From Pocillopora damicornis (lineage: Eukaryota), in assembly GCF_003704095.1 (NCBI RefSeq), contig NW_020844410.1:62001-126000 (forward strand): a stretch of 64,000 nucleotides of DNA, in the 5' to 3' direction. This document shows positions 1 through 20,729 of the stretch, piece after piece. The notes beneath the pieces were generated by a model. The model saw only the letters and a program-made list of their open reading frames with translations. It searched no databases and was not told the origin of the DNA. Positions within the stretch are counted from its first letter, which is position 1; every line of letters starts with the position of its first letter. The position numbers and the translations under genes are program-made.

Positions 1-238
1 AAAACACGAGCAAAATTTAATTGAGAATTAACATCAAACCTCACAAAAATAGAAAACAATTCTTCTTACTGTTAATTGTTACCACTGTTTGAATTAATAA
101 TGAGGCTCTGATTGAAAGTCAGAAATGCACTAGCTAGTCGGCTTTTGGTTTACTTTTTATAAGTGGCAAAGTGTGCAGCGTTAACGGTAACGCTTGGCTA
201 GTTTTCTATTTACTAAACAGATCAAAAAACGGTCTTAC

Positions 239-520
239 CTGTTGAATCGCGCGTGTCTGTCGCTGAAGGATTAATCCTCGTCTTTCGAGCTGGTTTTCGA
301 AATATGTTCTTTGAGTCGTCAGTTTAAGAGCGGCAGCCGCAGATTGTTCACTTGCTTCTTCATCTTCTTCACAAGTTTCAAACACCAACACGTAATCAAT
401 TCTTCGCCTCGGCTCACTACTGCTCAAATAAACTCCTTCGTTATCATCCGTGATAAAATTTTCTGAAACAGTTTCATACTCTTCTTCGTCCAAAAGTCTT
501 GATAATTGTGTTTTACTCAT
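239..520 (-). CDS. ANO: Anoctamin/TMEM16 paralog A0, first coding exon (rest of gene lies beyond the left edge of the window)
   Basis: 94 codons MSKTQLSRLL...GVYLSSSEPRRRIDYVLVFE...FENQLERRGLILQ, the anoctamin N-terminal motif. It ends at a phase-0 donor CAG|GTAAG at 239/238, the same position as in the other paralogs. Confidence 0.85.
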
Positions 521-1312
521 GTTCGGCTTGTTGAAAGCAAACTGAACTCAAGTAGCACTTCGTGACTCGAAAAGTGTTCAAAACCACTAAATCACTTCCC
601 CTTGAGGCACTATACTATTCTTTGAAAACAATGCTACGTGCCTTACTCGGTATTTCTGGAGTTCACTCGAGGACAAAGTCTACTCAAATGAGCATAACAA
701 TGCAACTGCAGGACTTACTTACGCATTTTGATAAGAAAACCTGAACTAAATTAAAAACATTGGTAAAATCTTCACAGGGGCTTCCGAATTTTCTAACGCT
801 GTCAATTCAAGATCGAGAACGACGCTTTTTAACTAATATGTTTAATTGGAGGCGCTTCTCTTCGGCAACGGTATCTAATTTAAATTCACTGTACTTGCTA
901 GTCATTAATTAGATTTTTTTCTCAAAAGAGTCAACCTCCATCATGAACGGAGTTGAACGAACCGGCTTCTTTTATTTCCCAGCACGTTATAAATAGCTGC
1001 TAACGAAAAGGAGCTTGTGTTTTGGGTTACGTCCCACAAGCGAGAGCCTTAGCCAGTGAATTAATACAAAATTAAAGTCCTAATATATTTGCCTTCCTAA
1101 ATTTCTTTATTTAAAACAATATAAATTCAGCTATAGAGCTAAGCACTAGCTGAAATGAAACTGTGAAAATGAAGCACAGACATATTTTAAGCTCCCTATC
1201 TTCCACTCGCCCAAGCAGAAATCTGGGTGATTAAGGCAATTCTAAAATTTGTGGTGATGTTTTATTCCGTCGAGCTTATCTTGGTCAGTAAATATCAAAT
1301 CAAAGCTCCTGC

Positions 1313-2527
1313 GTAAATACATCTTTTATTTGCCGGCTGGGAGGTCCGTATGGTGAAAAACTGCGACCAAGGTCTTGAAAATACTGCCTGAGGTCACAGT
1401 TTTTCACCATACAGACCGACCCTTAGCCGGTAAATAACATATTTATTTTTTTAAACTTGACGAAATTCTTTCCGAAAGAACTCGAATGATTTAGGGCTGT
1501 AAATACGGTAAGATCTTCCATAAACTGAACAATTTTTGAGCGAGTAAATGGTAGTTAAAATAGAGGTGATACAAATTAAATAGAGATGCCTCACCGAAAC
1601 ATTTTCATTTCCGTAACGATGAAGGTGATTTAAAAGGCTTCCAAACAAACTTTGAAACATCTTTTTTTACAAGTATCTGTCACAATCTGACACCTGTCAA
1701 TTAGGGAGCGCGTAAGAAAAAAAAAGCGCAAGAACCTTTGAAAAACAACGGAACTAGTTTGGCAAAGACTGTCACGACAATGTTTTCTTCAAAAACAGTC
1801 AATGATCTAACGGAAAGTATTATTCTCTCTCATCGACGATTCATTCATGTACGAAGATTTACCTCTGTTCATTTCAAGTAAACGGCGAGGAGAGTAATTG
1901 TGAGTAAATTCAAATTTTTTATTTTGAAGTTGTGAGAGTTTGTTTGTTTGTTTGCTGCAATGGCGTGTGTAAATCTGGTCTTTCCTCCACAAAAACTAAA
2001 TTCGAATGGCACCCTCCGATGAAACACACGGGGATTCAAGCGGCCTTTTCTCATTAATTTTCCTTCAGTTTCTGTTGTGCAATTTACAGTACAAATGTCC
2101 AAATTGAACGGACTTGGAAAGACTCACCGAGAGCGTATATTTGTTGTAGAACTTAAATTAAAACGTCGCTCGCTCTTTCACTACGAACAAATTGTTTGAG
2201 AAAATTCAGATATTAAATGAATGAAAGTTCCGTCGTTCAGTTTAACTGTAACCAAATACTTCACGTTTTAAGTGATTTCAGAGAGAGGAAAGAGAGGATT
2301 CATAAGTTACTTCTCGGCTTGAGGTAGTGACCGACGTGTTTGCTTAAAAATACTCCCCAGCCGGAAAAACGAGATATATTTATGAAAAATGGCAACGAAA
2401 GTTGGGATGTACTCGGCGACTCACGGAAGCGTTACCGTGGCCCGTGAGGAGAGATAGGAAAATACTGACCGGGTAAAGAACCAATCAGATTGCAGGATTC
2501 GTTACCGTGCCCTCTCAAAAAAATAAT
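1313..2527. mobile_element. Non-autonomous element with a long terminal hairpin (Crypton-like architecture); far boundary approximate
   Basis: Hairpin arms 1343-1368/1392-1417 (24/26 complementary) plus outer arms 1326-1338/1425-1437. Short A/T inverted repeat at ~1442-1452 and ~2517-2526. No coding remnant recognised. Confidence 0.45.
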
Positions 2528-4576
2528 TTCTTAGTATGTCTCCATTTAAAGACAAATGTCAACCTCCGTGAGGCGTTAAGCTGACAGAACTGGCTTTCCG
2601 CTCACGAGTTATTCCTACTCCCGTTTCTCTCGCGGAGTAGAGTTCACCCAAATTTCAATCTCAATTAAGGCAAATAATTTATCCAGTTCACGATGAGTAA
2701 GAACCTAAAGTTTATATATCCGAGCTACCACTTTGAAAAAATCTTCATCCAACAACAAGCGTGTAGCAGTATGACTGTGCAAGCTTCCTCCCAACCCTCC
2801 CCCCCTCCCCTGCATAACTTAACCCTCCCCACCAAGGCCTTAGAAATGAAATTCATTTCATTAATAAAAATTGTCTTTAAGTGATGGCCTTAATATGGCA
2901 ACAAGCAGCAGTTCCGTTTGAGAAAGCGTAACTGAAGTTTATGTTTTGATAAGACTTATATTAAGGCCCAGCCAGCATAACAGGCGTAATTTTTTTCACG
3001 TTTTTCAGGCGAACGGAGGCGAACGCGAGGCGAGCGCGAAGTGTTAGTCACGTTCGAGGAGAGAAGCACAGAGAAAAATAACGCCCGTACGCATACTATT
3101 GTTCAAGATCTTCCGCCCCTTCATACACATCCAATCAACAACTAATCCCAAGAGCTGACTTTTAACACCTGTGTGTTATTTCATTGGATCTCTGTAAATT
3201 TCTCGTCTTCAGCAAGCATAAATGTTTGTAATTTCTGTCCGCCTGGGTCGAAGTATAAATTGTTTACAGGTGGGGTTTTGACAATTTGTCATCATTTAGA
3301 AAGGAAACCATTTTTCCAAAACGCAAACGTGTTCTTTAGTCAAGCTAATGGCTCCCTATCTCTTGATTCCCTCGTTCCTCGCCTTCCTTTCGTTTAACAA
3401 AATGCTATTTCCTCATTTGTGTTCCCCAAAAAGAATAACATGGCTACACAGCTAACCTTTCTCCCAGAGTTCTGTGATCCTTTCCTCCTGGTGCATCCTG
3501 ACTATGGCACCCGCCACCCAAGCGGGTGGTTAATACACACAGTCATATTTCTGCCCGGCGCTGACATATGAAAACCGCAGGAGTGAAAGTTATAGAACTA
3601 AAATAACTTAAAAGTAAAGACTAGGATCTCAATTAACGTGCGGCTACCGAACCCTTCTGGTTATAATATGATGCTACTCTCCTCTTTAGCCTGGTTATTT
3701 GTCCCAAACTCTGCGCGTCCTTACACTGGCTCGGAGAAGTTGATCAACTAACTTGAACTCAAATCACAGGTCGAAATGAAAAAGTTTATTTTTTCGCTAA
3801 CCACAAGAATTGTATCAGGATAAAGGCAGGGTGCTGACCAAAATAGCTTGAGCTGGAGAGGAAATTCTCACACTCAGCTTTTGATTCCAGAGCAACCGCC
3901 AAAGCTTTTAAGGATGACAGTGTAGACTTAACACCGATCATTTTTAAAACCAGCATGCCTCATCTGGTATATGGCAGTGTTTTGGCCTGGAGAAATTCAA
4001 GGTGTGACTTGATGATGGGAGACACTTTAATTTTAGAGATCTTTAATGCTGTAATACTAATGATTACTGAACTCAACATCACGTAGAGAGGACGTTTTAC
4101 AATTAATGATAAACCAAATGCATCGCAATATTGATTAGATGATGGCAAAAAATCAATAGAAATACGCGCGTCATATTTTTTCATGCACGCCCGGAAGGTC
4201 CTGGTAGCTTGATGGAGAAATTTTACTCCTGAAACATTATGAAAGACTCTTAGTGACGAATTTACTTTCCATGTATTTATAGACGCTTTTCCTCTTATGA
4301 TAACTTGTTTTCTAGCTTATGGGACTTGTCAGCGGCAGTGGACTGCAATAGCAGAATCAACCAGTCTCACTTTATCTCACAATAATATACGTAGTTTTGC
4401 TGTTTAAAAGCCTGGGCGTAGATTCCCCCCCCCCCCCCCTCCCCCAGAAAAAAGCAATTTTAAGCATTCAAGTTCTTACTGATAATTTTCCAAATTTTTA
4501 TCGTCTTTTTTATGTAAATAATGAATTGAAATTGGTGTAAGAAGTTGCATGTGTATCACACCTAAGATAATTAGGG

Positions 4577-7500
4577 TTAAGACTCGTATGTTTGATCAAA
4601 TTTTTTGCTTTCAACGTTGATTTCATCCAGGGCATCCTCATACTGTGTTACGTTATCATCCTCTTCTTCCTTAAGTTCCTCGATGTCACTGTCGTATTCA
4701 GGAGTATAGAACACTGTCTTGACCATTTCTCTTTCTCTTTCCATAATAAACTGCAGCTCATCAGGCTTGTCAGGCACCAACCAAGCAATAAATCCTGTCA
4801 CAGTGTAAACTACAAACTGAAATACGAACACGAAGGCCAACCGAGCAGTTAGGAGGTGCCAGTATGCTTTGGAGAAGCCATACGGGTAAGTGCTATCATG
4901 GTATCCAGGGTATCTATTCACAGAGGAAACAGAACATGAAACGAATGCTTTTTTTTGTGTGTATGGCAAATACTGTAGGGTAAACATCTGCCCCAAGACT
5001 ATTGTACCTCTTGAGGAGCGCAAGGAAGCTGAAAACAGCAATTAATCTAGGTTAGATCGGTCATTTCTAGGACAGATTTCATTTCAGAAAGACAGCAGCT
5101 CCAAATGAAGCTACCCTAAGTTACCATGAACCTCCCAACACTCTAAACACTCTATTGCTATTGCGATGAAAGCTATTTAACTACCTGCAATGACTTCTTG
5201 TGTAGTTTAGATTTTCTGTCGGGTTGTCTGGCTGGGTTCCATTTTCCCATGAGTAGAGGGTATCCAAATCAATGGCAGCTAGTGTAAAATTAACGTATCC
5301 CTTCAGAGTGCCTCCATATGAGGAATGACGATCAGGAGCGTACATGACTTTGTAAAGGAGTTTCGGGATAAACTCTGAAGTGAACGCGAGTATGAACGCA
5401 TTCACCAGCACTGAAGCTCTTGTCACAGCTTCCAGGACGTCGTACCAGGCCCCTATGTCCTCAACACGGGCGACATCCGGTCGGCGAAAGTGGCACAAGA
5501 ACTTGATAGCGTCCAGACGGATCTCAATGACGGTGTTAATAAAGGCAAACAACGGGCCGAGTGGGAACGCAGCCACAAACATGGTCACAAAGCCATACTG
5601 TAAAACTGAAATTAGTCAAGAATGATTCAATTCTGAGATTGCCACCCTTTGCCTCAGTGAGCATACAATCTAGATGTATCAGCAGAGGCGAAAATGCATT
5701 TTATAGACTAGTTCTATGTTATCTTGAGATAACAGGGCTTCGTACAGAAGCGGCTACATGAGGTCTCCACCAAGTAGCTGTAAATGGGGAAAAAAATTTC
5801 TGAAAGGGATCTTTAGACTGTAACAGTAAAGTTGGTGTCGATATTGGCGAATCACGATGCGCAAGTTTACCAATTAAACGAGAGAAAGACCGAATATTAT
5901 ATTCAAATACACATCGATTTATTATGCAATATATATATATATTTATTATCATCGTTATTATGACTATGATCATCATCATCATCATTATTATTATTATTAT
6001 TATTCTCATGATTTGAATTTTTCAATGTTCCATTTGAGTTACAAATTTGCTCCACTTGCTTAGCAATCATGAACTTGGCCTTACAACGGCTTTTGAAAAT
6101 TCAGTTGAGTTGAAAAGATATCAATTTCCACAATATTTAAAATTCTTACCAATTTCTAAGTACTCCCAGAACATGTAATGCTTTTCACATGCAGTTAGAT
6201 CGTAGTCGCTTTCGTACTGACGACAGTCATCTGGATTCTCTTTGTTACGCCGATTCTTCAACAGACTCAAATATCTAAAACCAAATGAGAGCATGCGCAC
6301 TTAGAATAGGCTGTTAGGTTTGAAACTGTGCTAACGAAAGAAATAAACAAATTCCGAAAAGATTCAAGCTCTCTAAAAGAACGTCCTTGGTACTTACGGC
6401 ATCGCCATTTCAAATATATTGAAGAAAATCTGCTTTCCCACCATGATTATAAAAAGTTGAACAGCAAGTTCCAAAAAGCATCCCTGCTCGCTGCAGCCGT
6501 CTAATCGATACTTGCTCATCAGCCTCCTGTATTTTCCAGGAGATCCCACAATAAGGTTTGATTTAAAGAAAGCAATATAAAATAGGGCTGAATAGTTATT
6601 GACGAACTGGAAAGAAGACATTTTCCATGTGAAACTGTCCTTGTAAGCGCTTTCTGTGGGTGGGTTTTCCCAGTCAGTGAGCCAAATTGCCAGCTTCTCG
6701 TACACTTTGGACAAAAACATTATAAAAACAAGATTGATAAGCGCAGCCGTTGCCGCCGTGATGATACGAGCGCGTTTTTGAACATTGTTGTCCCTGCTAC
6801 CACTCAGTACAGCAAACATGGCGGCACGGTATACCACTACGCCAACTGCAGCTCCGAGAACTAGAAGAATCATGAAAGCTACCACGGCAAAGACTGTGCC
6901 ATATCTTCGGTACGTCTTAACCTTGGAAACTACAGGTTCTATTTTTCCGGTCTCTGGGTTACGTTTAAAGAGAAACATTTGCAACTGTTCTTTTGGTAAA
7001 CTTTTCCTGTATTCAGGACGAAATTGTTCTTCTTCTTCCTCAAACTCAGAGGTGTGCCATTCTTGAGCGAGGGATGCTTGGCGACGTTTCCAAAACTCAA
7101 GGAATAGCGTGGCCCAGATGGCCACAACAAAAGCAAGGAACACAGTTCCATCGTTGTCAAGCAGATGCGTTGTGTAAGCATACATGCAGACGTCGGGAGC
7201 TAGATTCCAAAAGCTGCACTGTTTGTCACACAATGGACACATATACCAACGACCTCTGTTTTTCTCGTCGCAAAGATCTTGAACAGGGATGTAGGAGCCT
7301 GCTGAGATAACACCAGCGATGAATACCAGCAAGCCAACAATAGCAAGAGGAAACAACATGGCGGTGTAAAATCCGAGCCAGGCAAAATAGAGGCCGACTT
7401 CGTGTCCGAAGTAATCCTTGATGGCATCATAAGGTTGATGCTTGAAGAATCTGCCAAATCTTGCCCAGTCTGCTTTCAGCTTCTGTCGATCATTTGTTGC

Positions 7501-8792
7501 AGTTTCTCCTTTTTCCTGCGAATCTGGGCCATCATGAAGTGAATACCCAGCGAGGTAAGCCTGATCCAGAAGAAGCCTCTGTAGCCCCACCCCGTCCGGT
7601 CCTCTCGCAAACCGGGCATTTTGAAGCAAGTGTTGGACGATGTAGTGGCGATCCAAGACGTTGAAAAAGCTCTCTTTGTCCTCGTTGTTCACATACTCGC
7701 TCAAGTAATCTTCTAAAAAGGGAGCCATGTAAAAGCTCGGCTTTTCGCCCAGGGTGGAATCATGAAGGACAAAAGGATTTTTGCTTTGCAGCTTTTCGAA
7801 CAATTTGTGACCAATTATATTCTCTATCCATGAAGAAAATACCGCGTCATTGGGTCGAAGAGGAACCTTTAATCTCATCCGTTCAGCACTCTGTGCCAAC
7901 ACATTCCAAGGCGCATGGATCAGCACAAAATGACGTTCTATTTCTGGATCCTGCATAGTGCATGAAAAGTAAATTCAAAATTTTACATGAACATTGATGA
8001 TATAAACAAGAGCTAATCGAATTTAAACTGGAAAAGGAGAGAATGTGCGGCTGTATTATAAAACATTTCATCGCTGTCCCTTCCCCCAACAGTCTCCTCT
8101 ATCAGCAACGTAATTCACCCAGGCGGTTACTTTTCATGTAGCTAGCTTAAGTAGTTCCTACTCTTAGCGTGTCGATGCGATGGTACTTTTACCGCAAAGC
8201 TTTACAGGGTAAATATTTTTCTTCAAGGCTTTAGTGAGTACTTGCAACCATTACCCTGCAATTAATATTGAGATTCTCCTATTCGTTTGAGTTTATAAAT
8301 CAGATTAAAGAATGTTAAAAGATCGATAAAATTCTAGGCGGTTATTGTTAGCTATGAAAACTTGGAGAATGAAAATTTACTGAAAAGCCCTGCGAATAAT
8401 GCAAATTAAAACATGGCCCTATAAGCCTCTAAATAAATATTGAATGTGATAAAATGAAATAGCAATAATAGAATTTCTAATCTATAATTATTTACCTCCC
8501 CGATGATCACAGTCTTACGCTGCAGATCTAACCCTAGTTTATTTTCAAGGCATTTTTCAAATGAATATCGCCATGCGAGAAGTTTCCTTTGTTTTGCGAG
8601 AGCATCATCATCCATTCCACTGACATCCTTTGGAGTTTCGTAAACCAAAACGTAATCAACATGCTTTTCGTAGGTTTTATTTCTCTTGTGTAGTTCGCTT
8701 GGATCGTCTTCAAGGGATACTTGCGATTTTTCATTCAACTCTATCTGGATGTTATCGATTCGGTCCAATCTCGCATAGGATCCCCTTTCCAT
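4577..8792 (-). CDS. ANO: Anoctamin/TMEM16 paralog A1 (Ca2+-activated channel/scramblase family), 5 exons, ~910 aa
   Basis: Exons 8792-8496, 7950-6398, 6274-6150, 5605-5185, 4913-4577, all GT-AG and phase-consistent (2733 nt). Motifs: [104 protein letters not shown]. Confidence 0.93.
5926..6005. repeat. Compound microsatellite (AT)n/(ATC)n/(ATT)n
   Basis: Visible directly; it accounts for the spurious ORF 5719-6009. Confidence 0.85.
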
Positions 8793-11121
8793 ATCAATTT
8801 TATATTTCCAGCTTTGCAACGGTGGCCAGGTGATGACAGATGCGATTAAATTAAGGAATTCTTGTTGGAGAAATACGTTGGCAGGATGTGTTAGGTTCAA
8901 TGTCCTTTTAAAGCAGGCGAAAATTTCAAAAGGCGTTAAGAATGGCTTCGAAATGCGAATCAGCGTTGAAAAACTCGCGCCGTTATTATTAATTCAAGCT
9001 GCTTTTATGATATTTTGGAAACACAGAGGCCCATGACAGCATTAATAATTTATTACTAGAAATGATGCTTCTGTACTTGTAGTTAATGGAAATGTCTGCT
9101 CAATTATCGTAAAGCGGCTTTGTGACAACAGTCCGATTCATCATCTCATGCGAAAGTAAAATAATTATACTGCAGGAGCAATATTTCGACTAAGTAACTA
9201 TCGGTCATAGCGAAGTATGTTAAATAGAAACAAATCGCTTTCAAAGCGGTCAAAAATTTGACAGGAGCTTGGCAAATTTTCGTCCTTTAAATGGTTTTTA
9301 CTGGCTCGCTATATTTGGATGTTTTCCAACGTTTTTGGTGTAGAGAAAACTCTTCATGCTCGAAAACATGAAGGTTAAACATAGATGATATGCAATGAGG
9401 AAGATAACCTTTTCAAGGAACATAGTGGTACTTTTTTTTTTAATTATCATGTGAGTCATTATTACGTTTTGGGCTGAGGAGTATTCAGAAAACACCTGTA
9501 GCTGAGAATGAAGCGAGCGCTCCAGGGGGTGACCAAACAAAACAAGCTGACTCATAATTCCACCAGCAAAACTGAACAAAAACGTGGATATAGAACACCT
9601 GGTAAACTAAGGAGGGCGTTGGCGGTTTAAATGACCAACTGGTACGTACAAATGGAGTAAATGATAAACCATATGAATGATTGGTAAACACTAGAGTAAA
9701 ACATTTTAGGTACACCGTTATGATAAAATTATGATTAAGGATGATACCTATTGTGGCATGGAAAATAATTACTTCAGACAGAGTTTTGCCGAAATTGTTT
9801 CAAAAGGTTGTAATTGTTATCCTCTGGTGTTCTGCATCACATACGATTGATATCATCACAGGTAAAAAACTTCTAAACGACATTTGTATCCAGCGGTGTC
9901 CATTGGCTTGACTGAGGACCCTTATTTTCAAGAGAACTGAATTTCTTCAGGCTACCATCGGTTATTTTGTGCGGAGGCTTTGTGCATTGTAAACCCATTT
10001 CAGGTTTATGAAAAGAAATTCGAACTGGAAGACAAAAGATAAAGAAATAATGCTATTATTCCCTTAGGAAATTAATAATTATGTTTCTTTTCACCCTGCA
10101 GTTGAACGATACTTTTATTACCTGTGATAAGAGGTCTGATAAATAGGGACAGCTTTACCGCTGTCTAATCCTTTTGGGACGGAGAGATTTAAAATGTCCG
10201 CAATAATATAGGAAATTTCATTCAAAGGTTTTCCTCGAACTTATGTGTGAGAATCAGAGGCTGCTTGTGAGAGTATCCTGTGACAAAGCTCTCTTCAACT
10301 TAAAAGGGAGAAAATGAAGCAATTATCGAGAACGCTATCACAAACCCTAAGGGTTTTTTAATTCTCATCTTAGATGAAAATGATCATTTGTAACTTTGCA
10401 GGCGATTAATTGAAGATTCAATTGTAGTTTATTGCAATCTCACGCTGGGTCTTTTACAGAGAAAAAAAAACACTTTACAACCAATGATGCTTTTCGTTCT
10501 TAACATTTAACTCTAGAGCACCAAGCGAAATAATCAAACACTTTTCTAGATTAAGGTTATCAGTAACGGTTTCTCAACTAAACCACTGTTTATATAACAG
10601 GGAGTTGAGTATGTTGAAACTGCTGGGAATAATCAGCACGGAGAGCCAAAATATAAATGCAAGATTCGAAAATATCGAATTAGTTTGAGATATGGTACTT
10701 GCTCTGAAATACAATAGAACATGAAATGAACATTCTTACGTCTCAAAATTTAGAAGGGTCAAAACCGCGAAAATTGCTTATTATATAAAAATAATTCAAC
10801 CTTTTACCAAAAGGAAATTGTAAAGTACAAGATATTCCTACATGTTCAGAACACATTGCACGCAAGTAAATTTTCTCTAAGCTATGAGCCAACTAATATG
10901 AAAAGGTTTAACTACGTAGAAAAATTCAAAGCCCTTGGAAACAATTGAAAAATGGGCATTTGAAATGGCGACAATGCGAAAAATTTTCGTGTATTCCTCA
11001 TTTAGCTGAAAGAATAATTTTTTAAGATCTGAAATTTCCCTTTTATATTTGTGGCTCGTAATGGTCAGTTATGTAGTCTACTTCTACAGTTGTTTTGAAA
11101 TTATGTCAAATATTGATCTCA

Positions 11122-14100
11122 TTACAGCATCTCATTATCCGGGGGTACGTGATGGTCACCATTGCTTTCATCAATATCATACTTCTTTCTAAACGCCAAC
11201 TTCGTCAAATGCTGTTCTCGTTTGGCCTTCAAATCCAGATCCTTTGGAACATCAGGTACCATGTAGGCGATGAAACTTGTGATGAGGTACACAGAGAACT
11301 GGAACACAAACACGAAAGCGAGGCGCGCAGCTATCACGTGCCAGTATTGCTTGTTCTGTTTGTAAGGTGGAGTCGATGCAAAATAGCCATGATATCTAAG
11401 ACAGAAATAAAGAATCACTTAAGTCGTAGATAGGCAATGTGATGTAATATCTGGAAGAACTTGAAAACCCGTTCTCAAACTCATTAAGACACGCCAATTT
11501 CGTCACGTGCATTCCGGTGAAACACCGAAACGACGTGCTGTCTTTGAGTTTCATATAATATCAAACCCTTGAGTTTAATAAAGCATCAAACCCTTGATTT
11601 TGATAAAGCATCAAACTCTAGTGAACTCATTTCTTAATATGAATATTAATAACGCGTATTTGAATACTTAAAACAAAGACACCAACATGAACAAACAACC
11701 TTGTGATAACATTATTCACAGACAAATCACCATAACAATACAATTTTTCGTAACAACAAACTTGCCGACAACATGTTCGTGAATATGTCCATTTTCTTTT
11801 TTTCCTGAGGCACAATTAAGAAGCTATATCAAAAAAATCGTGCATCGGATTTCACCAGGGTTCCCAAACACTCGAAAACAATAAAAGCATCATCAGTTTC
11901 ATCAGTTTTCTCGTGTTTGGAAACCCTGATGAAATCCTCGCACTCGTTTTTGAAATAGTACGTCGATGATTCACCCAGGCTAGAACCCAGTCCTCTTACA
12001 GTAACCACAAGAACACAACATGTCACGTCGAGTTTTGCATAAAATGATAAAAAGATACGTTTGCATTATATAAGAAAAAATGGGACCCCCTCGATATCAT
12101 TCATAAAAACAACAGCAATCGAAAAAAAAAAGAAAAAAAAAAAAAAGGAAATTAGGAAATTAAAACAACGTAGTTACCTGCAACTGCTATTATGATAACG
12201 AAGATTTTCATAAATATTTTCTGGTTCTGTTCCAGGTTCTTGCTCGAACAGGTAGGAGACATCAATAGACGCCAAAGAGTTCTCTATGTATCCATCCAAC
12301 GTACCTCCTCCTGTAGAGTTGCGGTCTGGAGCATACTTCATTTTGTAAAGAAGCTTTGGGATGTACTCTGATGTAAAGGCCAGCACAAAGGCATTTACCA
12401 GGACTGAAATTTTTGTCACACCCTCAAGGATTCGGAACCAGGCTCCGATATCTTCAGCACGTGCAGCGTCTGGCCTCCTAAACTGCGATACAAAGTTGAT
12501 GGCGTCTACACGGATTTCAGCTATAGCAGTAAGGAGGGCAAAGAAAGGACCAAGAGGGAATGCAGCCACGAACATGGTCACAAATCCATACTGTAAAACT
12601 GCAAGTCGAATAACATGTATATATTAGACGGTATATAGAACGAGCGTTACGTGTCCGAGCATGGGCATCTTTTCAATGTGTTCGCTGAGAGAAAAAAAGA
12701 TATCGTAATTTTGATGACGCTCACCTGTTCTTCCCTTTTAGTCACTGTTGATCTAGGATTGATTTCGATCAAAGCACCACGCAGTTTATAGAGTTACACA
12801 ATTTGGACTAATAAATAATTTAAATATATCGCCTAATTTTTGTTTGTAAGAGGTTTTCAAGAAATGTTGAATTACGTAAGGTCTTTAGAAAACAATCCAA
12901 ATTGCGATATATTGTAGAACGGCGGATGAAGCTTCTAATGTGAAATTGTCACTGAATCACAAAAATATTACAGCTTACCAACTTCGAGATACTCCCAAAA
13001 CATGTAGTGGTCTCCTTGAGGACTCAGATCAAAGTCAAGCTGGTACTGTGGTTGGTCTTTGTCAGTTTCTTTGCGCCTCTTCAACCAGTACATGACATAT
13101 CTGTGAAGAAATTACGATAACTTATCTCTAAGCATTGCAATTGAAAGCTGCTGGTAAGCAAGGCAAAAAACTAAGTCAAAGTAATTGTAAAATCAAGAGA
13201 ATATGTGAAGCTGATAACACAAAATTACCTATACTGGCAGAGTGCAGTAACGTTTTCCAATTGAAAAAGATACCCAAATTCTTACATTTTTCAAGATTGT
13301 TGTGAGACATAACTCTAACTCTTCAAGAACACAGTTTTAGATGTGATATCGTATTCTCAGGTCGTTGAGAGAGAGGTTACTCATTTATTGGGTGTTTTTT
13401 AGCGACCTATTTTGTTACTTACGGTATAACAACTTCAGTGACGTTGCCAATAATCTGCTGCCCGACCATGATGATGAGAAGCTGGACACAAAGCTCTAAG
13501 AAGCATCCTTGTTCGCTGCAGCCATCCAATCGGAATCGACCGCCTATGCGCTTGTACCTGCCAGGGGTTCCAACCACCAGCCCTGACTTGAAAAAGGCGA
13601 TGTAAAAGATTGAAGCATATGTATTCACAAATTGGAATAAGTACATTTTCCAAGTAAAGCTGTCTTCGTAGTCGGTGCGCGTAGGTGGGTTCTCCCAGTC
13701 AGTCAACCAGACGGCCAATTTGCTGTAAGCGAACTTCAAGAGGTTGATTGCGAGAAGATTGAGGAGAGCTGCAGTTGCTGAGGTAATAATCCTGGCACGT
13801 GTTTGGATTTTTTTGTCTTTGTTTCCACTTAAGGAAGCAAAAACTGCAGCTCGATAAACGACTACACCAACCACAGCAGCGATGACGAGGAAAATCATGA
13901 AGATAATAATGCTGAAAACCCCACCATACCGCCTATATAGAGTTAACTTGGGTACGTACGGTTCCATCTTTCCAGTGGCTTCATTTTTCTTGAGGGTAGT
14001 TACGGTTGAAGAGTACTCAGGACGAAGAGGTTCCTCTTCTTCTTCAAAGTCATCTGTGTGCCACTCTTGAGCAAGACTAGCCTGCCGACGCTTCCAGAAC

Positions 14101-16098
14101 TCAAGGAACAACGTCGCCCAGACAGACGCGATGAGAGCTAAGCCCACTGTCCAATCATTGTCAAAGAAATGTGTGACGTAGGCATAGAGGCAGGTGGACG
14201 AAGCTAGATCCCAGTAGCTACACTGCCTGTCGCACAATGGGCACATATACCATTTGTTTTGGTTTCCCTTATCGCAGACATCTTTGACTGGAATGTGAGA
14301 GCCCGCGGAGACAATTCCATACAGAAACACAACAAGACCAACGATGGCGAGAGGTACTAACATTGCCGTGTAAAATCCAAGCCAAGAAAAGTACAGGGCG
14401 ATTTCACTGCCAAAGTAATCCTTGATTGCTCCATACGGCTGGAATTTATAAAACCTTCCAAATCTGGCCCAGTCTCGATGCAATCGCTGTCGATCATTTG
14501 AAGGCTCCTCATCGGATTCAAGAGCAACGGGACCATCATGAAGTGGGTATCCTGCCACATATGCACCTTCATAAATCATTCTTCTGAGCCCAACACCATG
14601 TCGACCTTCTGCAAAGCGAGCATTGAAGCAAATTTGCTGCACAATGTATATGCGGTCAATGTTGTCGAAGAACTCCGCCTTGTTGTGGTGATTGACAAAC
14701 TTTGTAACTTCAGCTTCCTTGAAGTTAGCCATGAAGAAGCTGCTTTTTTCTTCCAAAGTAGAATCCTGCACAATCAAGGGATTTCTCCGACGCAGTGACT
14801 GCATTCTTTCGCTTCCGATTGTCTTCTCCATCCATGATTTGAACACAATGTCGTTTTCTTGAAATGGAACTTTGAGACGCATCGCCTCCGCTTTTTTAGC
14901 CAATACGGGCCACGGAGCATGAATAAGGACAAAGTGTCGCTTGACTTCAGGATCCTGGTAGAAAAAACATACATAAGATTTAATTTAAAGAAGTTTCGAT
15001 CAACAGATGCTACGTTCAGAAACGTAACAAAGCTCTTTTCAATAAATCGCTCGCTTTTAAACTAGTCTGTGGATAAAAGATTTTTGCCTGCCCTAAATCA
15101 ACCTAGGTCCAAGCGTATTTGATAGAAGTTAAATTTGTTCAATTTATTGGCTAACTCTATATTTAATTTTTGGACGATTTTAATAACACACGAACACATG
15201 TTTGTTTGAACGCTTACTGGTAGTATTCAGTATATAAATTTTAAAAAGGTGGGCGAGATTTATCTCAATAAGGCAATAATTGAGAGTCATATGATATTTG
15301 AAGATGATGGCAGTTGTATATTGTTACGTAATTAACTGCTCAGTTTTCCATAACTCGTGATCGTGCCCCTTCAATGAAGATGGAAGGAAACTTTCAACAA
15401 GTAGCAAGAGTTTTTTTAACTTTCCTAACTTCCTTTTGATAAAATTGAGTAATTTTAGCATTTCGTGAAGCACATTTTACGCCCTTATTAGCCTCTACCC
15501 TTATAGGTTTCGAGTCTGGCATTAACTGAACTTGCTCCGAAGGGTTTATGGGAAAGACAATGAAATATTAGCATTAGATCAATGATATTATTGTGTGAAG
15601 CTTGACAATATTGATCATTACGATAAAGCGTGCAGTTATGTTTTTTTTCTCAAGGTGATTTCAAGCAACACATATCATTGAAAAGCATCAAGCTTTTCCA
15701 TTCATTATCTGCGTGTTCAAGAAAAGCAAAAAGGAGAATTAGCAATTAATGATGAATTACAGAGCTCGGCAAACTATGAGAACAACAACCAGCGAGGGTA
15801 GCCCCACCTGTGCAGAGACGATCTCATCGTATTCTATGTTAAGCCCTTCTTTCCTTAAGCAATCTTCAAAAGCTTTCCGTTGATATTGCTTACTGTCATT
15901 TGAATTAGCTTGCTCCTTTTGATTTGTTTCATAAACTAACACGTAGTCGATGCGCTTTGCTGGCTGTGCATCGTCGCTGAAATATACTCCTTTCGGCAAT
16001 CTTCGATCTGATTCCTCCCTTAATTCTAGCTGTGTATTGTCATTTTTATCCTCTTCATCTTGGCTTAATCTGAAATAGCCATTTAATCCATTTTTCAT
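11122..16098 (-). CDS. ANO: Anoctamin/TMEM16 paralog A2, 5 exons, ~879 aa
   Basis: Exons 16098-15808, 14954-13423, 13100-12979, 12598-12178, 11395-11122 (2640 nt, phase-consistent). Same intron positions as A1. Motifs [57 protein letters not shown]. Confidence 0.93.
11826..11958. repeat. Long imperfect hairpin (probable transposon end) in the last intron of paralog A2
   Basis: Arms 11847-11871 and 11913-11937 are 23/25 complementary. Confidence 0.6.
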
Positions 16099-18139
16099 CT
16101 TGGGTTCCCTGTATTTCGGTAAGCTCTTCAGTAAAGCGTCAGTTTGGCTTAGAGAATAAATGGGCGTGATAAACTTATGCTTCTCGGCTCATTGCTTTCA
16201 TCGTAAGGTAAGATTTTGTATAAGAAATCAGGCACGGGTGCTTTGTTTCCTTAAAAAGATTTCGCATCATTGAACACATTGTAATGAGCTAAGCTATATC
16301 ACTCACGCGTGAAAAGTTGAGTTGTGAACTTTCTAGGGTTTTTGAAATTTCAAAGACAGTTGTTTTGAACATGTCAGTTCTCGCGATCGAGGTGCGTCGA
16401 TGACGTTTCTCCCGCAGAATGTACGCAGTTATACCTACTCAAAGTTCTCTGCTGTTCTACTACGGCCTATGCAGAGTACGTAGTACGCCTAACAAGTGAA
16501 TTTTTATTTTCAAACTCAAAATATACCAACTTTTGCCCTAGCTACGTTTAACAGCAATCAGGAGCATAATGTTTTCATAATGTTTTAAAGAAAGGTGCTG
16601 TTCTAACAAGCGGACTCTGCATGCTGCACACTGACCTATCATTTCGTCACTGTGCTTACAACTAAAGCAAGAAAACTACAGCGAATAGTAATAACTCACT
16701 GGGAAAGTTAAATAGTACTTTTGTGTGGCAGTAAGTCGTTTTCGCAATTTCTGCTGTAGCAACTGACTTTCTGATGCATGATAATACATGAATAGCTCGG
16801 AGAAGAAAGAATCGACAAACGTTACTGAATACTAAACAAGAATATGCGAAGAGCTGTGCTCTGGGTTTTTAAGTTTTGTTCAAGCCTTTACCGAAGATTC
16901 TATTTGCTGGATGCTGGTATTTTTCATGAGCTCTCTAAATAAGCATGCATGTCCTGGGAGAAAATGCTCTAAATATGTTTAAATTAAAATATAAGGTTGA
17001 TTCAAATCGAGGAGAAGAGTGAAAGTCGTTGTCTATAGTGACCAAAACTTTACTTCAAGAATGTCAAATTATGGCTAGTAGCTTCTCAAAGGTATATCAT
17101 TCAATTTTAGAAGATACGTAAATTTTCAAATTACTAAGTAATTGTTACAAGATGGAAATAGAATTGCTTTAGTCCTTTTAATTTTCAGTTTCAGTATTAA
17201 TGGCGATTGAATCCGGGAAGGTAAAATACTCTTCATTTACATTTCCTGTTTACATCCAGCGGTGAATGCTAATTTAGCTAGGGTCGTGTATTCCCTGAAG
17301 GATTTTCCACTATGAAGGACAAACAGAAAATAAACCCCTAAGAAAATGAAGTCCTCAATAGGAAGCACGTACCCCAGTTTGCGAAAATCGATCGCAATGA
17401 TTTTCCGAACGCTTTCATCGCTCAGTCTTTTAGATAACAGATCAAGTTGGATGCTTTTGAAAGTCAAATGATTTTATCTTTGTCTTTCTTTGTAAACAGC
17501 AATCGACGGTAAAATATTCCGATTTGTTCTGAATTCAATTTTTTTCACTGCTAAAGGCAAAACATTAAGAACAACCCTCGTCAAATTTTAGATGAAATAT
17601 TCAGAAAAAGCTCGAAAGAATTCTAGCTATTATTAAAATTACACGCTCGATTTAGCAATCAAAGTAGCGGAATATTTATCTTCCCGCAGAATATTCGTGA
17701 ATTCTCGACGAAGAGATTGTTTATCCACAAATCTAGAGTTAATGTATTGCCAAGCGTGTTACCAAGCACAACCAAAGTTGATTTTCAAGAATTTCATTCA
17801 AGAGGGCTGATTCTGTTATAAAATTATGTTTTGCTGCTTGATTAAACTCACTCCAACCCTTACGTGTGAAGAATGACACTGAGTTGACCGATGGAATTCT
17901 GAAATAACCTCAGAAATCTAGTGGATTCAACGCTTTTCTTTAACTTTCCCGTACGGAATAAGAGATAACACTCCATATTTTGCAAACAAATTAAATAAAT
18001 AAAGGCACTCATTCGAAAAACTTCTTTGCAAAGAGTTTGAAAGTACTTATGTAATAGAGCGGTAGTCAGACTAACTACACTGAGTTTGTTTTGGCTACGC
18101 TTCAAATGTACGCAATGAATCTACTAGGTCATGACTAAC

Positions 18140-18436
18140 CTGAGATGATATACACTCTGACCGTTCTAGGATTAACCCAGCGTTTGCAAGACTTTCTTCA
18201 TATGCCCTCCTCATTTCCTCACGTTTATTGGCTTCTTCCTTGGCTTCTTCATCGTTATTTTCTTTCTCCTCGCAACGCTCGTATACAAGGACGTAGTCGA
18301 TTTTCTTTCTCGATCCTGCGTCGTCCAAATACAATCCCTTCGTCTCTGTCTGTTTGGAGTGGAAAGATGGCTCCACCATATTAAGAAGAATGTCACCATC
18401 TTCGGTGGTTTTCGTGTAGGCGACAGGTTTCGCCAT
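18140..18436 (-). CDS. ANO: Extra anoctamin first coding exon with no gene body of its own; probable alternative first exon of paralog A2
   Basis: ATG at 18436, 99 open codons MAKPVAYTKT...[21 protein letters not shown]...YEESLANAGLILE...SSQ, phase-0 donor CAG|GTTAGT at 18140/18139. I find no anoctamin body exons between 16098 and 18140. Confidence 0.8.
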
Positions 18437-19626
18437 GAGAGCTCGATTTGTGGCGTAACTCTTCAGTGGCGTTGACAGAAGCGACGAGTTCGCTGAACTT
18501 TGCAATGGGTGTGACAGAGGGCGAACATATTTGCATAAAATACAAATTAGATGTAATTGCCTTACAAATATAATGTATCGCACGTGTTGTTAAAACTCCA
18601 GGTGCTTTATATCTCTTGAATGAATACTGTCATTTTTCGGCGAAAAATCGAAAAAAATAAAGGAGAAAAACTAGAGAGCACATTTCTAACAGATATTGTA
18701 GCGCGCAACGAAATGATGGATGTATGTCAAAATATTATGCTCCTTTTTCATCCACCTGCCTCTTGAATTATTCATGTATATTTTTTCTTTCATTTGCACA
18801 AAAACACTATCGGTTCTAGACTTTTCAGCGAAACGCTGCGAAGCAGGTTTCGCGCTTAAGCGCGCGCGTTAGAGTGCGCATTGGATATGGGATGGAATCA
18901 GAACGCGAGAGAAGCGATATTCAGAGTTAGAAATTCAGTAATCAAATTCAGCGCGGGCCTTATTTCAATCTATTCCGAAGGGACTTTGAAACATGCCCTC
19001 CCCTGTCTGTGAAAAACCTTTTAAATATATTTCGAGCACAACCTACCATAACCTTTAAGCTGATCTCATGTACATCACATTTTCAAGGAAACAGTTTACT
19101 GACACTTATCTTGTAGGAATACAGGACACTCGATAAATTTTCCATTTCAGAATAGCACATTTTCTTTTATCTTCGAGCAACAGGGAAAGTACGCAATAGC
19201 TTCAAGATCATTAGTAGTTTAATACCAGTCACATCGAGTTTCATACCAAATACATCGAGCTCCTTTTGCTTTCAGCTTAAAACTACCTCAGTTTAGCTGG
19301 CGGAAACTGTCGGGAGAATTGAGGCGAGGGATAATCATAGATCTTCATTAGTTTTTTTTATACTTATTGATGCAAAATAAGCTTGATATTTGAATTTTGT
19401 ACGTGTGATGCTTTTTGTAAAACTTAAGCAGCTTTTGATTAATACAAAATAAACTTAAACTGAAGACCTATCCTCGAGATTTTTCTTGCCTTATGGTATC
19501 ATTTAAATGATCGCATCTCAGGTCCTACTTTTGTGGTTCCTCGAGCAGCGGAGATGATTCTAGATTTATTACCTTTCTGGCTCGTTCATTTTTCAGAATG
19601 AGGCGGCAACACAATCTTAACAATTC

Positions 19627-19829
19627 TTGAACCCTCTATACTTTATTATACTTTCCCCATACCGTTTTCCATACATTTGCTACGATGCTGATAAGGAGAA
19701 TCTGTTTAACGATCAAGAGCTTCGTTAGTTGTGAGCACTTCCTTTATTCTCATGACCTTAATGTTCGATTGAGGGATGATGTTGTAAGGAGAAATTAGAT
19801 GCAGTCATCCTTGGGAGTCAAAGGGTTAA
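19627..19829. mobile_element. ~200-bp TTAA-ended (piggyBac-like) MITE
   Basis: Ends TTGAACCCT...AGGGTTAA; internally similar to the copy at 42303-42515 (…gctgataaggagaatctgtttaac…tgtaaggagaaattagatgc…). Confidence 0.7.
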
Positions 19830-19862
19830 TTTACAGAAGAGTCAAACTATTGTCCCAAGCTT

Positions 19863-20729
19863 TTTATTTCATAGGTACTAGGATTTATCCACAAAAATCG
19901 TAGTAAATAAAATTCGTACTGATTCTAAATGTAGCCAATCAGGAGTACGAACGACAAAATTTCACCGTGAAAAATTATCGTTCGTCCAATCAGCAACGCG
20001 AACAACGAAATTTCACTAATGATGAATGAACGTACTGAAGAGAACGTCATGCGAGAGCCGTTGCACAAAACCCGCGCACTTTGAAAAATGGCCGAGGGAA
20101 GGTTCGCTTCTGTTTACTCAGTTGAAGAATTCATTTTAGAACACGAAAACAAAAATACCGCTCAAAAAACTGAAAGAGATGTAAGATTGCTTGAAAGATT
20201 TTTGAAAACGAAGGACGAAGACAGGAAAATTGAAGATATTCCAGCGGCTGAGTTGAATGAATTCATTAGCGAATTTATTATCTCCGTACGCACTAAAGTG
20301 CGAGTAAGAGTGCGTACTCCGTACGCACTCTTTACATGACACTAAGTAGTTTGTTGGCATGGCTTCCTTTATTATAATATTAATAGACATTGAACTTGAT
20401 TGATATCTGATGAACACAGGTAAGCTTAAGTGTTATGAACTTTATGCACTTTTATTAACTTGTTGTTGAGAAATTTTTAAACTACTTTTTACGCTTTTAT
20501 TTCATCGCCCCATTTGTGCTATTTGTCTACCAAAGACAACACGAAAAAATCTCAGCACCTATGAAATAAACACATTACAGCATGGAAAATGCTTTGTACG
20601 ATTTTCATTCACTCGTTGATACGTATCAGAAATCTCACTCGTTCGCTGCGCTCACTCGTTCGTTTTCTGATACTACACAACTCGTGAATAAAAATCGTAC
20701 GCGCGCATTTTCCATGAAGTAATCTCTAT
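19863..20729 (+). mobile_element. Internally deleted Crypton-like (DUF3504 / tyrosine-recombinase) non-autonomous element
   Basis: ORF 20088-20339 (ENKNTAQKTERDVRLLERFL...RKIEDIPAAELNEFISEFIISVRTK) resembles the N-terminal part of Crypton/DUF3504 (KCTD1/ZMYM/QRICH1-type) proteins, then breaks off. Exact 14-bp inverted repeats at 19863-19876 and 20557-20570. Terminal ~135-bp imperfect palindrome at 20581-20716. Confidence 0.7.

What the first reader, a model, noticed from the sequence alone, without database searches (positions are those of the whole stretch)
15808..18436. Two complete, homologous first exons feed one anoctamin body: variable-first-exon architecture
Seen: 18436-18140 (99 codons) and 16098-15808 (97 codons) each have their own ATG, the IDYVLVYE motif and a phase-0 donor at the homologous codon. 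Only one gene body (acceptor at 14954) follows. The distal exon has no stop or frameshift despite heavy divergence from the proximal one, and a TATAAA lies upstream on the minus strand (~18606-18612). Inference: duplicated promoter+exon-1 cassettes give one channel two swappable cytosolic N-termini, a miniature version of the protocadherin/UGT1A design. All six DYV-motif exons in the array end in phase 0, so cross-paralog splicing would also stay in frame.
Basis: partly seen in the sequence, partly recalled or inferred. Interest (0 to 1): 0.85.

Follow-up and report, generated by a model that had tools for sequence, protein, structure and literature searches.

The report
Coral anoctamin with two first exons
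One stony-coral anoctamin (TMEM16) gene really has two related, separately conserved first exons that RNA shows spliced to the same second exon, so it can make two proteins differing only in the first ~100 residues; this is a validated but ordinary case of a known design.

Summary
Exons 18436-18140 (99 codons) and 16098-15808 (97 codons) each have an ATG, match the start of the Anoct_dimer domain and end in a phase-0 GT donor. Only one gene body follows, with its acceptor at 14954.

RNA contigs from four studies carry the joint 18140->14954. One study also carries 15808->14954. The proximal exon has its own contigs in all four.

The distal exon is the ancestral, main first exon: full-length transcripts of Acropora, Montipora and two other corals, and Nematostella anoctamin-4, all start with it. 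The proximal exon is the extra one.
- It lies intact between the distal exon and the body in three other coral lineages.
- It is frameshifted in one pseudogenised copy.
- It is absent from Acropora, Montipora and an anemone-like outgroup.

Synonymous sites are saturated, yet both exons keep ORF, ATG and donor, which indicates purifying selection.

This belongs to a known class: homologous N-terminal substitution through alternative promoters after exon duplication. It has two members, not a protocadherin-type array. The origin of the proximal exon is unresolved, and cross-paralog splicing was not tested.

The scan has noted a similar layout (a GPCR with four first exons, s1-775449) elsewhere in this genome.

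The parts
18437..18693 (-). 5' leader of the distal first exon (minimum extent)
   Evidence: X5 record 12 (1110 nt) covers 18139-18693 and is joined to exon 2. The leader holds four upstream ATGs. The true start site is not mapped.
18606..18611 (-).
   Evidence: Present in the sequence, but it lies inside the X5 transcript contig that reaches 18693. It is not shown to be the core promoter.
18140..18436 (-). Distal first exon, coding part: 99 codons, ATG to phase-0 donor CAG|GTTAGT. It is the ancestral and main N-terminus.
   Evidence: Pfam PF16178 E 2.7e-8. Joined to 14954 in 4 of 4 RNA runs. Orthologous N-termini occur in full-length transcripts of other corals and in Nematostella.
14955..18139 (-). 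Intron removed from distal-exon transcripts (3185 nt). It contains the proximal exon.
   Evidence: Joint 'skips 3185', ends GT..AG on the minus strand, in X1, X5, X6 and X9.
16099..16329 (-). 5' leader of the proximal first exon (minimum extent)
   Evidence: Proximal-exon contigs end upstream at 16329 (X1), 16299 (X5), 16294 (X6) and 16152 (X9). Depth over 16464-18039 is about 0 in the three polyA/oligo-dT runs. The leader holds five upstream ATGs.
15808..16098 (-). Proximal first exon, coding part: 97 codons, ATG to phase-0 donor CAG|GTGGGG. It is the lineage-restricted, apparently minor N-terminus.
   Evidence: Pfam PF16178 E 9.5e-11. Joined to 14954 in X9. Twelve ortholog clusters at 49-99% identity. 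Intact at the same place in L002, L004 and L013.
14955..15807 (-). Intron removed from proximal-exon transcripts (853 nt). It is partly retained in some contigs.
   Evidence: Joint 'skips 853' in X9. X1 record 3 and X6 record 17 read through the donor to 15464 and 15733.
13423..14954 (-). Shared exon 2: the rest of Anoct_dimer and the first 278 positions of the Anoctamin domain.
   Evidence: Pfam PF16178 positions 56-220 (E 4.9e-40) and PF04547 (E 1.7e-90). The donor CC|GTAAGT was read.
11149..13099 (-). Remaining coding exons of the same gene. Approximate limits from tblastn: 13099-12980, 12599-12177, 11400-11149.
   Evidence: tblastn of the 880-aa transcript-derived ortholog P0048 covers its residues 612-874 here. 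PF04547 on 12623-12177.

Best explanation
This anoctamin (TMEM16) gene sits in a minus-strand tandem array of paralogs in a stony coral. It is transcribed from two start regions, and each start region has its own coding first exon. Either exon is spliced in phase 0 to the same acceptor at 14954. The gene therefore makes two full-length proteins that differ only in the first 97-99 residues.

Those residues comprise a disordered tail plus the first strand (IDYVLVYE) and first helix of the cytosolic N-terminal domain.

The distal exon (18436-18140) is the ancestral first exon, shared with sea anemones, and it is the one found in the main transcript contigs. The proximal exon (16098-15808) lies inside intron 1 and is an old addition. 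It was probably present in the common ancestor of the sampled coral lineages and lost in Acroporidae. It appears to be used less often.

Shown:
- both splice joints;
- conservation of ORF, ATG and donor of both exons;
- the same layout in other lineages.

Inferred:
- two separate promoters;
- translation of the proximal isoform;
- a functional difference. One candidate is different trafficking signals: an invariant YxxL plus an acidic SQDED stretch in the proximal type, and a D-x-x-[VI]-[IL]-L-E-M stretch in the distal type.
For: RNA
- The joint 14953/18139 (skips 3185, GT..AG) is in X1, X5, X6 and X9, which come from four studies.
- Long contigs cross it: X5 record 12 (1110 nt) and X6 record 16 (3338 nt, long enough for the whole CDS).
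- The joint 14953/15807 (skips 853, GT..AG) is in X9, in a 371-nt contig that is 98.6% like the window.
- In X9 both joint contigs stop 25 nt (plus 4 ambiguous) into exon 2. Two paths converging in a k=31 assembly graph would give that; the k value is my own knowledge.
- The proximal exon has its own contigs in 4 of 4 runs, while the intron between the two exons is nearly uncovered.

Ancestry of the distal exon
- Transcript-derived full-length orthologs P0048, P0049, P0051 and P0052 start with the distal type. The last two clusters hold RefSeq 'anoctamin-3-like' of Montipora and Acropora.
- Nematostella anoctamin-4 X2 (P0070) also starts with the distal type.

Conservation of the layout
- Distal, then proximal, then body in L002, L004 and L013, all intact with phase-0 GT donors.
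- Twelve clusters of proximal-type ORFs.

Selection
- dS is saturated or above 0.65 in every pair.
- dN is 0.17-0.48 for the distal exon, 0.26-0.67 for the proximal exon and 0.07-0.16 for the body. dN/dS is at most 0.4 wherever it can be estimated.

Same structural piece
- Both exons align to mouse TMEM16F residues about 51-119 and to PF16178 positions 1-51, which exon 2 continues at position 56.

Motifs
- YxxL at residue 8 in 16 of 16 proximal-type sequences and 0 of 15 distal-type sequences.
Against: - The proximal joint was seen in only one of four runs, with only 25 nt on the exon-2 side.
- In X1 and X6 the proximal contig reads through its donor into the intron. That product would end after 113 aa.
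- No full-length proximal-type protein is among the proteins fetched. The tools could not search for one, because the length window excludes it and joined models were not to be sent.
- All RNA evidence is assembled contigs, so start sites, strand and relative amounts are not measured.
- Both leaders carry upstream ATGs.
- Acropora and Montipora do without the proximal exon.
- The motif reading rests on short patterns only.
Confidence: 0.8

Rival explanations
1. The proximal exon is transcribed but is not a working alternative first exon. It would be a slowly decaying or regulatory leftover whose transcripts mostly stay unspliced, so the gene in effect makes one protein, the distal form.
For: - The proximal joint is in 1 of 4 runs only.
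- Contigs read through the donor in X1 and X6.
- Its donor GTGGGG is weaker than in most paralogs.
- The exon is lost in Acroporidae and frameshifted in L003 copy B2.
- No full-length proximal isoform is among the fetched proteins.
Against: - ORF, ATG, phase-0 GT donor and the YxxL-SQDED start are kept in at least five lineages although synonymous sites are saturated, with dN/dS 0.07-0.40. A neutral 97-codon frame would not survive that.
- The one decayed copy sits in a gene whose body also carries two stops.
- The X9 joint lies exactly on the predicted sites.
Confidence: 0.15
2. The distal exon is an orphan: the surviving first exon of a paralog whose body was deleted. It would not be part of this gene. 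This was my own starting alternative.
For: - It lies in a tandem array where every other first exon has its own body.
- It is only about 40% identical to the proximal exon.
Against: - It is spliced to 14954 in all four RNA runs, within contigs that carry the body.
- Orthologous full-length transcripts in other corals and in Nematostella begin with it.
- In Acropora, Montipora and L005 it is the only first exon of the orthologous body.
Confidence: 0.02
3. Assembly artefact: a gene body between the two first exons was collapsed or dropped from the assembly.
For: The assembly is a draft of 4393 contigs.
Against: - There are no Ns in 14.9-18.7 kb.
- Four further runs (X19-X22; kind not on record, one study) hold 0.96-0.98 of the sampled words of 13400-18800.
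- RNA joints skip exactly 3185 and 853 nt.
- The same exon-exon-body order, with no body in between, is seen in three independently assembled lineages.
Confidence: 0.01

Closest known systems
Tandem exon duplication-derived N-terminal substitutions produced by alternative promoters (class described for human genes in Martinez-Gomez et al. 2021, PMC8373072; includes PLEC, KCNAB1 and, formally, protocadherin and UGT1A clusters)
   Same: - Two homologous 5' coding exons lie in tandem, each with its own start codon.
- Each is used with a shared downstream exon in the same phase.
- Both copies are conserved over long evolutionary time. The paper reports 80% of such promoter events shared by human and fish.
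   Different: - This is a cnidarian anoctamin, not listed there.
- The origin by duplication on the spot is not shown.
- There are only two members.
- One lineage (Acroporidae) has lost one copy.
Clustered protocadherin / UGT1A variable-first-exon arrays
   Same: The splicing logic is the same: a promoter-proximal first exon joins the first constant exon, and the first exons lying downstream are removed as intron.
   Different: - Those arrays have many variable exons (roughly nine to over fifty; my own knowledge). Each encodes the whole specificity domain, and for protocadherins the promoter is chosen stochastically.
- Here there are two exons of about 100 codons. They encode a tail plus one strand and one helix of a cytosolic domain. 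Nothing is known about promoter choice.
Mouse Ano2 (TMEM16B) isoforms A and B from alternative starting exons 1a/2 and 1b (Ponissery Saidu et al. 2013, PMC3664704)
   Same: An anoctamin with two alternative start exons, each with its own initiation codon. In mouse the N-terminal difference changes the Ca2+ sensitivity of the channel.
   Different: - Ano2 exon 1b contributes only 7 unique residues and is not described as a homolog of exon 1a.
- Here the two exons are homologous and encode the same structural piece.
Orthologs: 'anoctamin-3-like' of Acropora and Montipora (RefSeq, 873 aa) and 'anoctamin-4 isoform X2' of Nematostella vectensis
   Same: - Exon 2 is 81-83% identical in the two acroporid genera, and 64% in Nematostella.
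- They have the same distal-type N-terminus and the same exon 1/exon 2 boundary.
   Different: The Acropora-like and Montipora-like genomic loci have no proximal exon in intron 1. Their RefSeq names carry no isoform suffix.

Membership tests
Anoctamin / TMEM16 | N-terminal cytosolic Anoct_dimer domain (PF16178) | tested here: met
   Distal exon E 2.7e-8 and proximal exon E 9.5e-11, positions 1-51. Exon 2 covers positions 56-220, E 4.9e-40.
Anoctamin / TMEM16 | Transmembrane Anoctamin domain (PF04547) | tested here: met
   Exon 2 E 1.7e-90 (positions 1-278). Exon at 12623-12177 E 1.3e-31 (positions 333-412).
Anoctamin / TMEM16 | Ca2+-activated channel or lipid scramblase activity | not testable with these tools
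   No functional data. The nearest solved relative by sequence of exon 1 is mouse TMEM16F.
Homologous N-terminal substitution by alternative promoters (tandem 5' exon duplication class) | The two alternative 5' coding exons are homologous to each other | tested here: met
   tblastn E 1.3e-9. Same Pfam segment. Same stretch of mouse TMEM16F.
Homologous N-terminal substitution by alternative promoters (tandem 5' exon duplication class) | Each exon is spliced to the same downstream exon, and the two are never joined to each other | tested here: met
   Joints 18140->14954 (4 of 4 runs) and 15808->14954 (1 of 4). No distal->proximal joint is listed. Support for the proximal joint is thin.
Homologous N-terminal substitution by alternative promoters (tandem 5' exon duplication class) | Two separate transcription start sites or promoters | tested here: inconclusive
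   Proximal contigs begin at 16294-16329, with almost no cover over 16464-18039 in the polyA runs. However, contigs cannot show starts, and no CAGE or RACE data are available.
Homologous N-terminal substitution by alternative promoters (tandem 5' exon duplication class) | Origin of the pair by tandem duplication of the exon | tested here: inconclusive
   In the exon-1 tree the distal clade is supported (98/91) and the proximal clade is weak (46/41). Holding proximal with distal gives p-AU 0.48; holding proximal with the first exon of the next gene downstream in the array (8765-8496) gives p-AU 0.48.
Homologous N-terminal substitution by alternative promoters (tandem 5' exon duplication class) | Both exons conserved in other species | tested here: met
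   L002, L004 and L013 carry both exons intact. There are 12 proximal-type clusters and a distal-type clade of 16.
Protocadherin / UGT1A-type variable-exon array | Many (three or more) variable first exons upstream of constant exons of one gene | tested here: not met
   Only two first exons precede this body. The other four first exons in the window each have their own body, or their body runs off the window.
Protocadherin / UGT1A-type variable-exon array | Regulated or stochastic choice among the promoters | not testable with these tools
   Contig depths cannot rank usage.

The most novel reading that the evidence does not exclude
The two first exons are an ancient switch, older than the split of the sampled coral lineages. 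It puts two different adaptor-type sorting signals on one TMEM16 protein. The proximal N-terminus has an invariant tyrosine motif YxxL followed by an acidic, serine-containing stretch. The distal N-terminus has an acidic dileucine-like stretch. The same channel or scramblase would then be sent to different membranes or cell types depending on the promoter used. Because all six first exons of the array end in phase 0, occasional read-through splicing between neighbouring paralogs could add further combinations.
Probability: 0.15. Interest if true: 0.55.

Novelty: new member of a known kind. Interest (0 to 1): 0.35.

Why it matters
It adds a checked non-bilaterian example to the small class of conserved, homologous alternative N-termini. 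This class is known to be unusually well conserved and functionally relevant in vertebrates (PMC8373072).

It corrects the gene model logic. The far exon is the real, ancestral start. The near exon is an extra start that annotation of relatives does not show, because the annotated relatives (Acropora, Montipora) lack it.

For anoctamin biology it offers a natural experiment on what the extreme N-terminus and the first strand and helix of the cytosolic domain do. In mouse ANO2 the N-terminus changes Ca2+ sensitivity (PMC3664704).

It does not open a long-standing question, and the mechanism is conventional.

Tried and rejected
1. Orphan-relic reading of the distal exon (my starting odds 45%): rejected.

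2. Representative search with the distal exon: it returned only short ORFs that run from the exon into the intron of genomic contigs. These were useful as orthologs but carry no names.

3. Genomic loci of named species:
- the Nematostella protein P0070 is not on record;
- the Acropora palmata protein P0181 gave only a cDNA contig;
- Acropora-like and Montipora-like loci were reached through short cluster members instead.

4. dN/dS: synonymous sites are saturated in most pairs, so only bounds can be given.

5. Origin of the proximal exon: the exon-1 tree has too few columns, and the AU tests reject neither tested origin. No other proximal-type exon exists elsewhere in the genome that could be a donor.

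6. TATAAA as the core promoter: not supported.

7. Full-length proximal isoform:
- none among the fetched proteins;
- the length window of the search for homologous proteins excludes full-length hits for a 97-aa query;
- I left out any search, fold or complex prediction with a joined (spliced) model;
- exons were searched one by one, by reference.

8. Cross-paralog joints (15808->7950, 27672->14954): not testable. The single read-laying run covered 14100-20000 only, and its loose-end table was cut.

9. Rfam on the high-depth spot at 19616-19812: no match.

10. Taxa of L002, L003, L004, L005 and L013 are unnamed metagenome-style assemblies, so the age of the exon pair is inferred from a gene tree only.
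Full report
**1. What is in the sequence**

On the minus strand the window holds a tandem array of anoctamin genes. tblastn of the large second exon and of all minus-strand ORFs against the window finds four bodies. They start near 7950, 14954, 26057 and 34432. There are six first exons of the IDYV type, at 439-239, 8765-8496, 16098-15808, 18436-18140, 27833-27672 and 34989-34831.

The two exons of the finding are exactly as described.
- Distal exon: ATG at 18436, 99 codons, donor CAG|GTTAGT after 18140.
- Proximal exon: ATG at 16098, 97 codons, donor CAG|GTGGGG after 15808.
- The shared acceptor CAG|GAT is at 14954, in phase 0.

The two exons are 39.7% identical over 68 residues (E 1.3e-9). 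Both match positions 1-51 of Pfam Anoct_dimer. Exon 2 continues that domain at position 56 and then runs into the Anoctamin domain.

Nothing anoctamin-like, and no N run, lies between the two first exons.

**2. RNA evidence**

It covered 14100-20000 with four RNA runs from four studies. All four are Logan contigs, so depth, starts and strand are not measured.

The joint that removes 14954+1..18139 (3185 nt, GT..AG on the minus strand) is present in all four runs.
- In X5 it lies in a 1110-nt contig that covers 14398-14953 and 18139-18693.
- In X6 it lies in a 3338-nt contig, long enough for the whole coding sequence.

The joint that removes 853 nt (15808->14954) is present in X9 only. It lies in a 371-nt contig that is 98.6% like the window.

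In X9 both joint contigs end 25 nt (plus 4 ambiguous) into exon 2. That is what a branch point in a k=31 graph gives when two upstream paths converge on one exon. The k value is my own knowledge of Logan, so this is inference.

The proximal exon has its own contigs in all four runs. Their upstream ends are at 16329, 16299, 16294 and 16152. Meanwhile 16464-18039 has about zero cover in the three polyA/oligo-dT runs. This fits a second start region but does not prove one.

In X1 and X6 the proximal contig reads through its donor into the intron. Such a transcript would stop after 113 aa (ORF 16098-15757).

Contig depths, which the tool warns are poor measures, are lower for the proximal contigs than for the body contigs in every run.

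| Run | Proximal contig depth | Body contig depth |
|---|---|---|
| X1 | 60 | 671 |
| X5 | 49 | 205 |
| X6 | 8 | 32 |
| X9 | 28 | 132 |

**3. Which exon is the original one**

A search with exon 2 returned full-length, transcript-derived orthologs at 82-85% identity: P0048, P0049, P0051 and P0052.
- The last two clusters contain RefSeq 'anoctamin-3-like' of Montipora capricornis and M. foliosa, and of Acropora palmata, A. muricata and A. millepora.
- All four start with the distal type (M-A-K-P-[VI]-S-Y...) and pass into exon 2 at the same place.
- Nematostella 'anoctamin-4 isoform X2' (P0070) also has a distal-type start.

So the distal exon is the ancestral first exon of this gene.

**4. The proximal exon in other lineages**

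A search with the proximal exon found 12 clusters of ORFs at 49-99% identity. DNA around orthologs was fetched through the look-up of encoding contigs and scanned with tblastn.

| Locus | Exon 2 identity to window | Distal exon | Proximal exon |
|---|---|---|---|
| L002 | 86% | intact | intact |
| L004 | 83% | intact | intact |
| L013 | 85% | intact | intact |
| L003, second B-like copy | 79% | intact | split over two frames |
| L008/L009 (Montipora-like) | 83% | intact | no trace at E <= 1 |
| L010 (Acropora-like) | 81% | intact | no trace at E <= 1 |
| L005 | 64% | intact | no trace at E <= 1 |

- In L002, L004 and L013 the order is distal exon, proximal exon, body, and both exons end in phase 0 at a GT.
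- In L004 the upstream neighbour is the ortholog of the window's upstream gene, so the region is syntenic.
- In the L003 second copy, exon 2 carries two stops, so that copy is a pseudogene.
- L005 groups with the anemone proteins in the body tree.

In the exon-2 tree, rooted on paralogs, the two acroporid genera are nested among lineages that have the proximal exon. L004 and L002 branch earlier. The window is sister to a starred group that holds L013, L003 and the acroporids (quick method, SH-aLRT only). The simplest history is one gain at the base of the sampled corals and one loss in Acroporidae.

The genome has 234,350,878 bases in 4393 contigs. This matches the 234-Mb Pocillopora damicornis assembly (PMC6208414). 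If that identification is right, the window is a robust-clade coral. The exon pair would then predate the robust/complex split. Both steps are inference.

**5. Selection**

Pairwise Nei-Gojobori estimates show synonymous sites saturated or high in every pair (dS 0.65 to undefined).

| Region | dN |
|---|---|
| Distal exon | 0.17-0.48 |
| Proximal exon | 0.26-0.67 |
| Exon 2 | 0.07-0.16 |

Where a ratio can be formed it is 0.07-0.21 for the distal exon and 0.07-0.40 for the proximal exon.

With that much silent change, an unconstrained 97-codon frame would not keep its ATG, open frame and GT donor in five lineages. Both exons are therefore under purifying selection, the proximal less tightly.

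**6. What the exons encode and how they differ**

Both align to residues about 51-119 of mouse TMEM16F. That is the IDFILVYE strand and the helix that follows it at the start of the cytosolic N-terminal domain. Naming them a strand and a helix is my reading from knowledge of TMEM16 structures. The swap therefore replaces a disordered tail plus two packed secondary-structure elements with homologous ones.

Within each type the tail is conserved in its own way.
- All 16 proximal-type sequences have Y-x-x-L at residue 8, most followed by S-Q-D-E-D or a close variant. None of 15 distal-type sequences has a YxxΦ (Φ = bulky hydrophobic) in the first 30 residues.
- Distal-type sequences share D-x-x-[VI]-[IL]-L-E-M-[VA]-E-P-S-F. 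In the window, in several corals and in the anemones this fits the acidic dileucine pattern [DE]xxxL[LI].

These look like two kinds of adaptor sorting signals. That is pattern-level inference only. An earlier first-reader note (s1-786084) made a similar remark for the whole array.

In mouse ANO2, alternative start exons change Ca2+ sensitivity (PMC3664704), so gating is an equally plausible target.

**7. Origin**

A tree of 62 first-exon peptides (102 columns) supports a distal-type clade (98/91). It places the proximal type outside that clade as a weakly supported group (46/41) on an unresolved backbone.

AU tests reject neither proximal plus distal as one clade (p 0.48) nor proximal plus the first exon of the next gene downstream in the array (8765-8496) (p 0.48).

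No second proximal-type exon exists elsewhere in the genome.

Duplication on the spot followed by fast divergence, and capture of a paralog's first exon by unequal exchange in the array, both remain open.

**8. Comparison with what is known**

Homologous N-termini made from tandemly duplicated 5' coding exons and alternative promoters are a described class. That class is strongly conserved between human and fish. Its authors state that protocadherin and UGT1A clusters use the same mechanism (PMC8373072).

The present case fits that class. The start sites and the duplication origin are still unproven.

It does not meet the array feature of protocadherin/UGT1A: there are two exons, not many.

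I found no paper describing it for a cnidarian anoctamin, but I did not search for that specifically. Whether RefSeq of this species lists both isoforms could not be seen, because records of the window's own genome are withheld by the tools.

**9. Verdict**

- Novelty: a new member of a known kind.
- Interest: moderate to low (0.35). It is a clean, conserved, RNA-supported example with a testable motif hypothesis, but no new mechanism.

Any search, fold or complex prediction with a joined exon model was left out.

Noticed in passing
window 19650-19810: A 150-165-bp interspersed repeat. It has more than 2000 first-look candidates in the genome, and 40 scored copies at 78-87% identity. It explains the enormous RNA contig depth (3,000-16,000) and the many loose ends at 19616-19812. 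There is no Rfam match. It is probably a SINE- or MITE-like element carried in many transcripts.
   Followed up: partly
L003:10001-17221: In one unnamed coral assembly the B-type gene is duplicated in tandem. The second copy keeps an intact distal first exon. Its proximal exon is split over two frames, and its exon 2 has two in-frame stops. It is a pseudogene in the making.
   Followed up: partly
window 15464-16329: In run X1 an 866-nt polyA-library contig covers the proximal exon and 344 nt of the intron behind it, then stops near an A-rich stretch. It may be an intron-retaining or intronically polyadenylated short transcript that would encode only 113 aa (ORF 16098-15757).
   Followed up: no
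window 18437-18693 and 16099-16329: Both 5' leaders, as far as contigs reach, contain upstream ATGs with short uORFs: four in the distal leader (up to 47 codons) and five in the proximal leader (up to 34 codons).
   Followed up: no
window 34831-34989: The first exon of the uppermost paralog in the window has no ATG within the aligned part. The frame opens after a stop just upstream of ...[11 protein letters not shown]. Its start codon may lie in a further upstream exon, or the N-terminus may be much shorter than in the other paralogs.
   Followed up: no
first-exon tree, rows P0011, P0015, P0016, P0019, P0020, P0022: This is a well supported subgroup inside the distal-type clade. Its exons do not end at the usual ...Q|GT position but run on to a conserved K-R-x-L-V. 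It may be a further B-like paralog or a lineage with a shifted donor.
   Followed up: no
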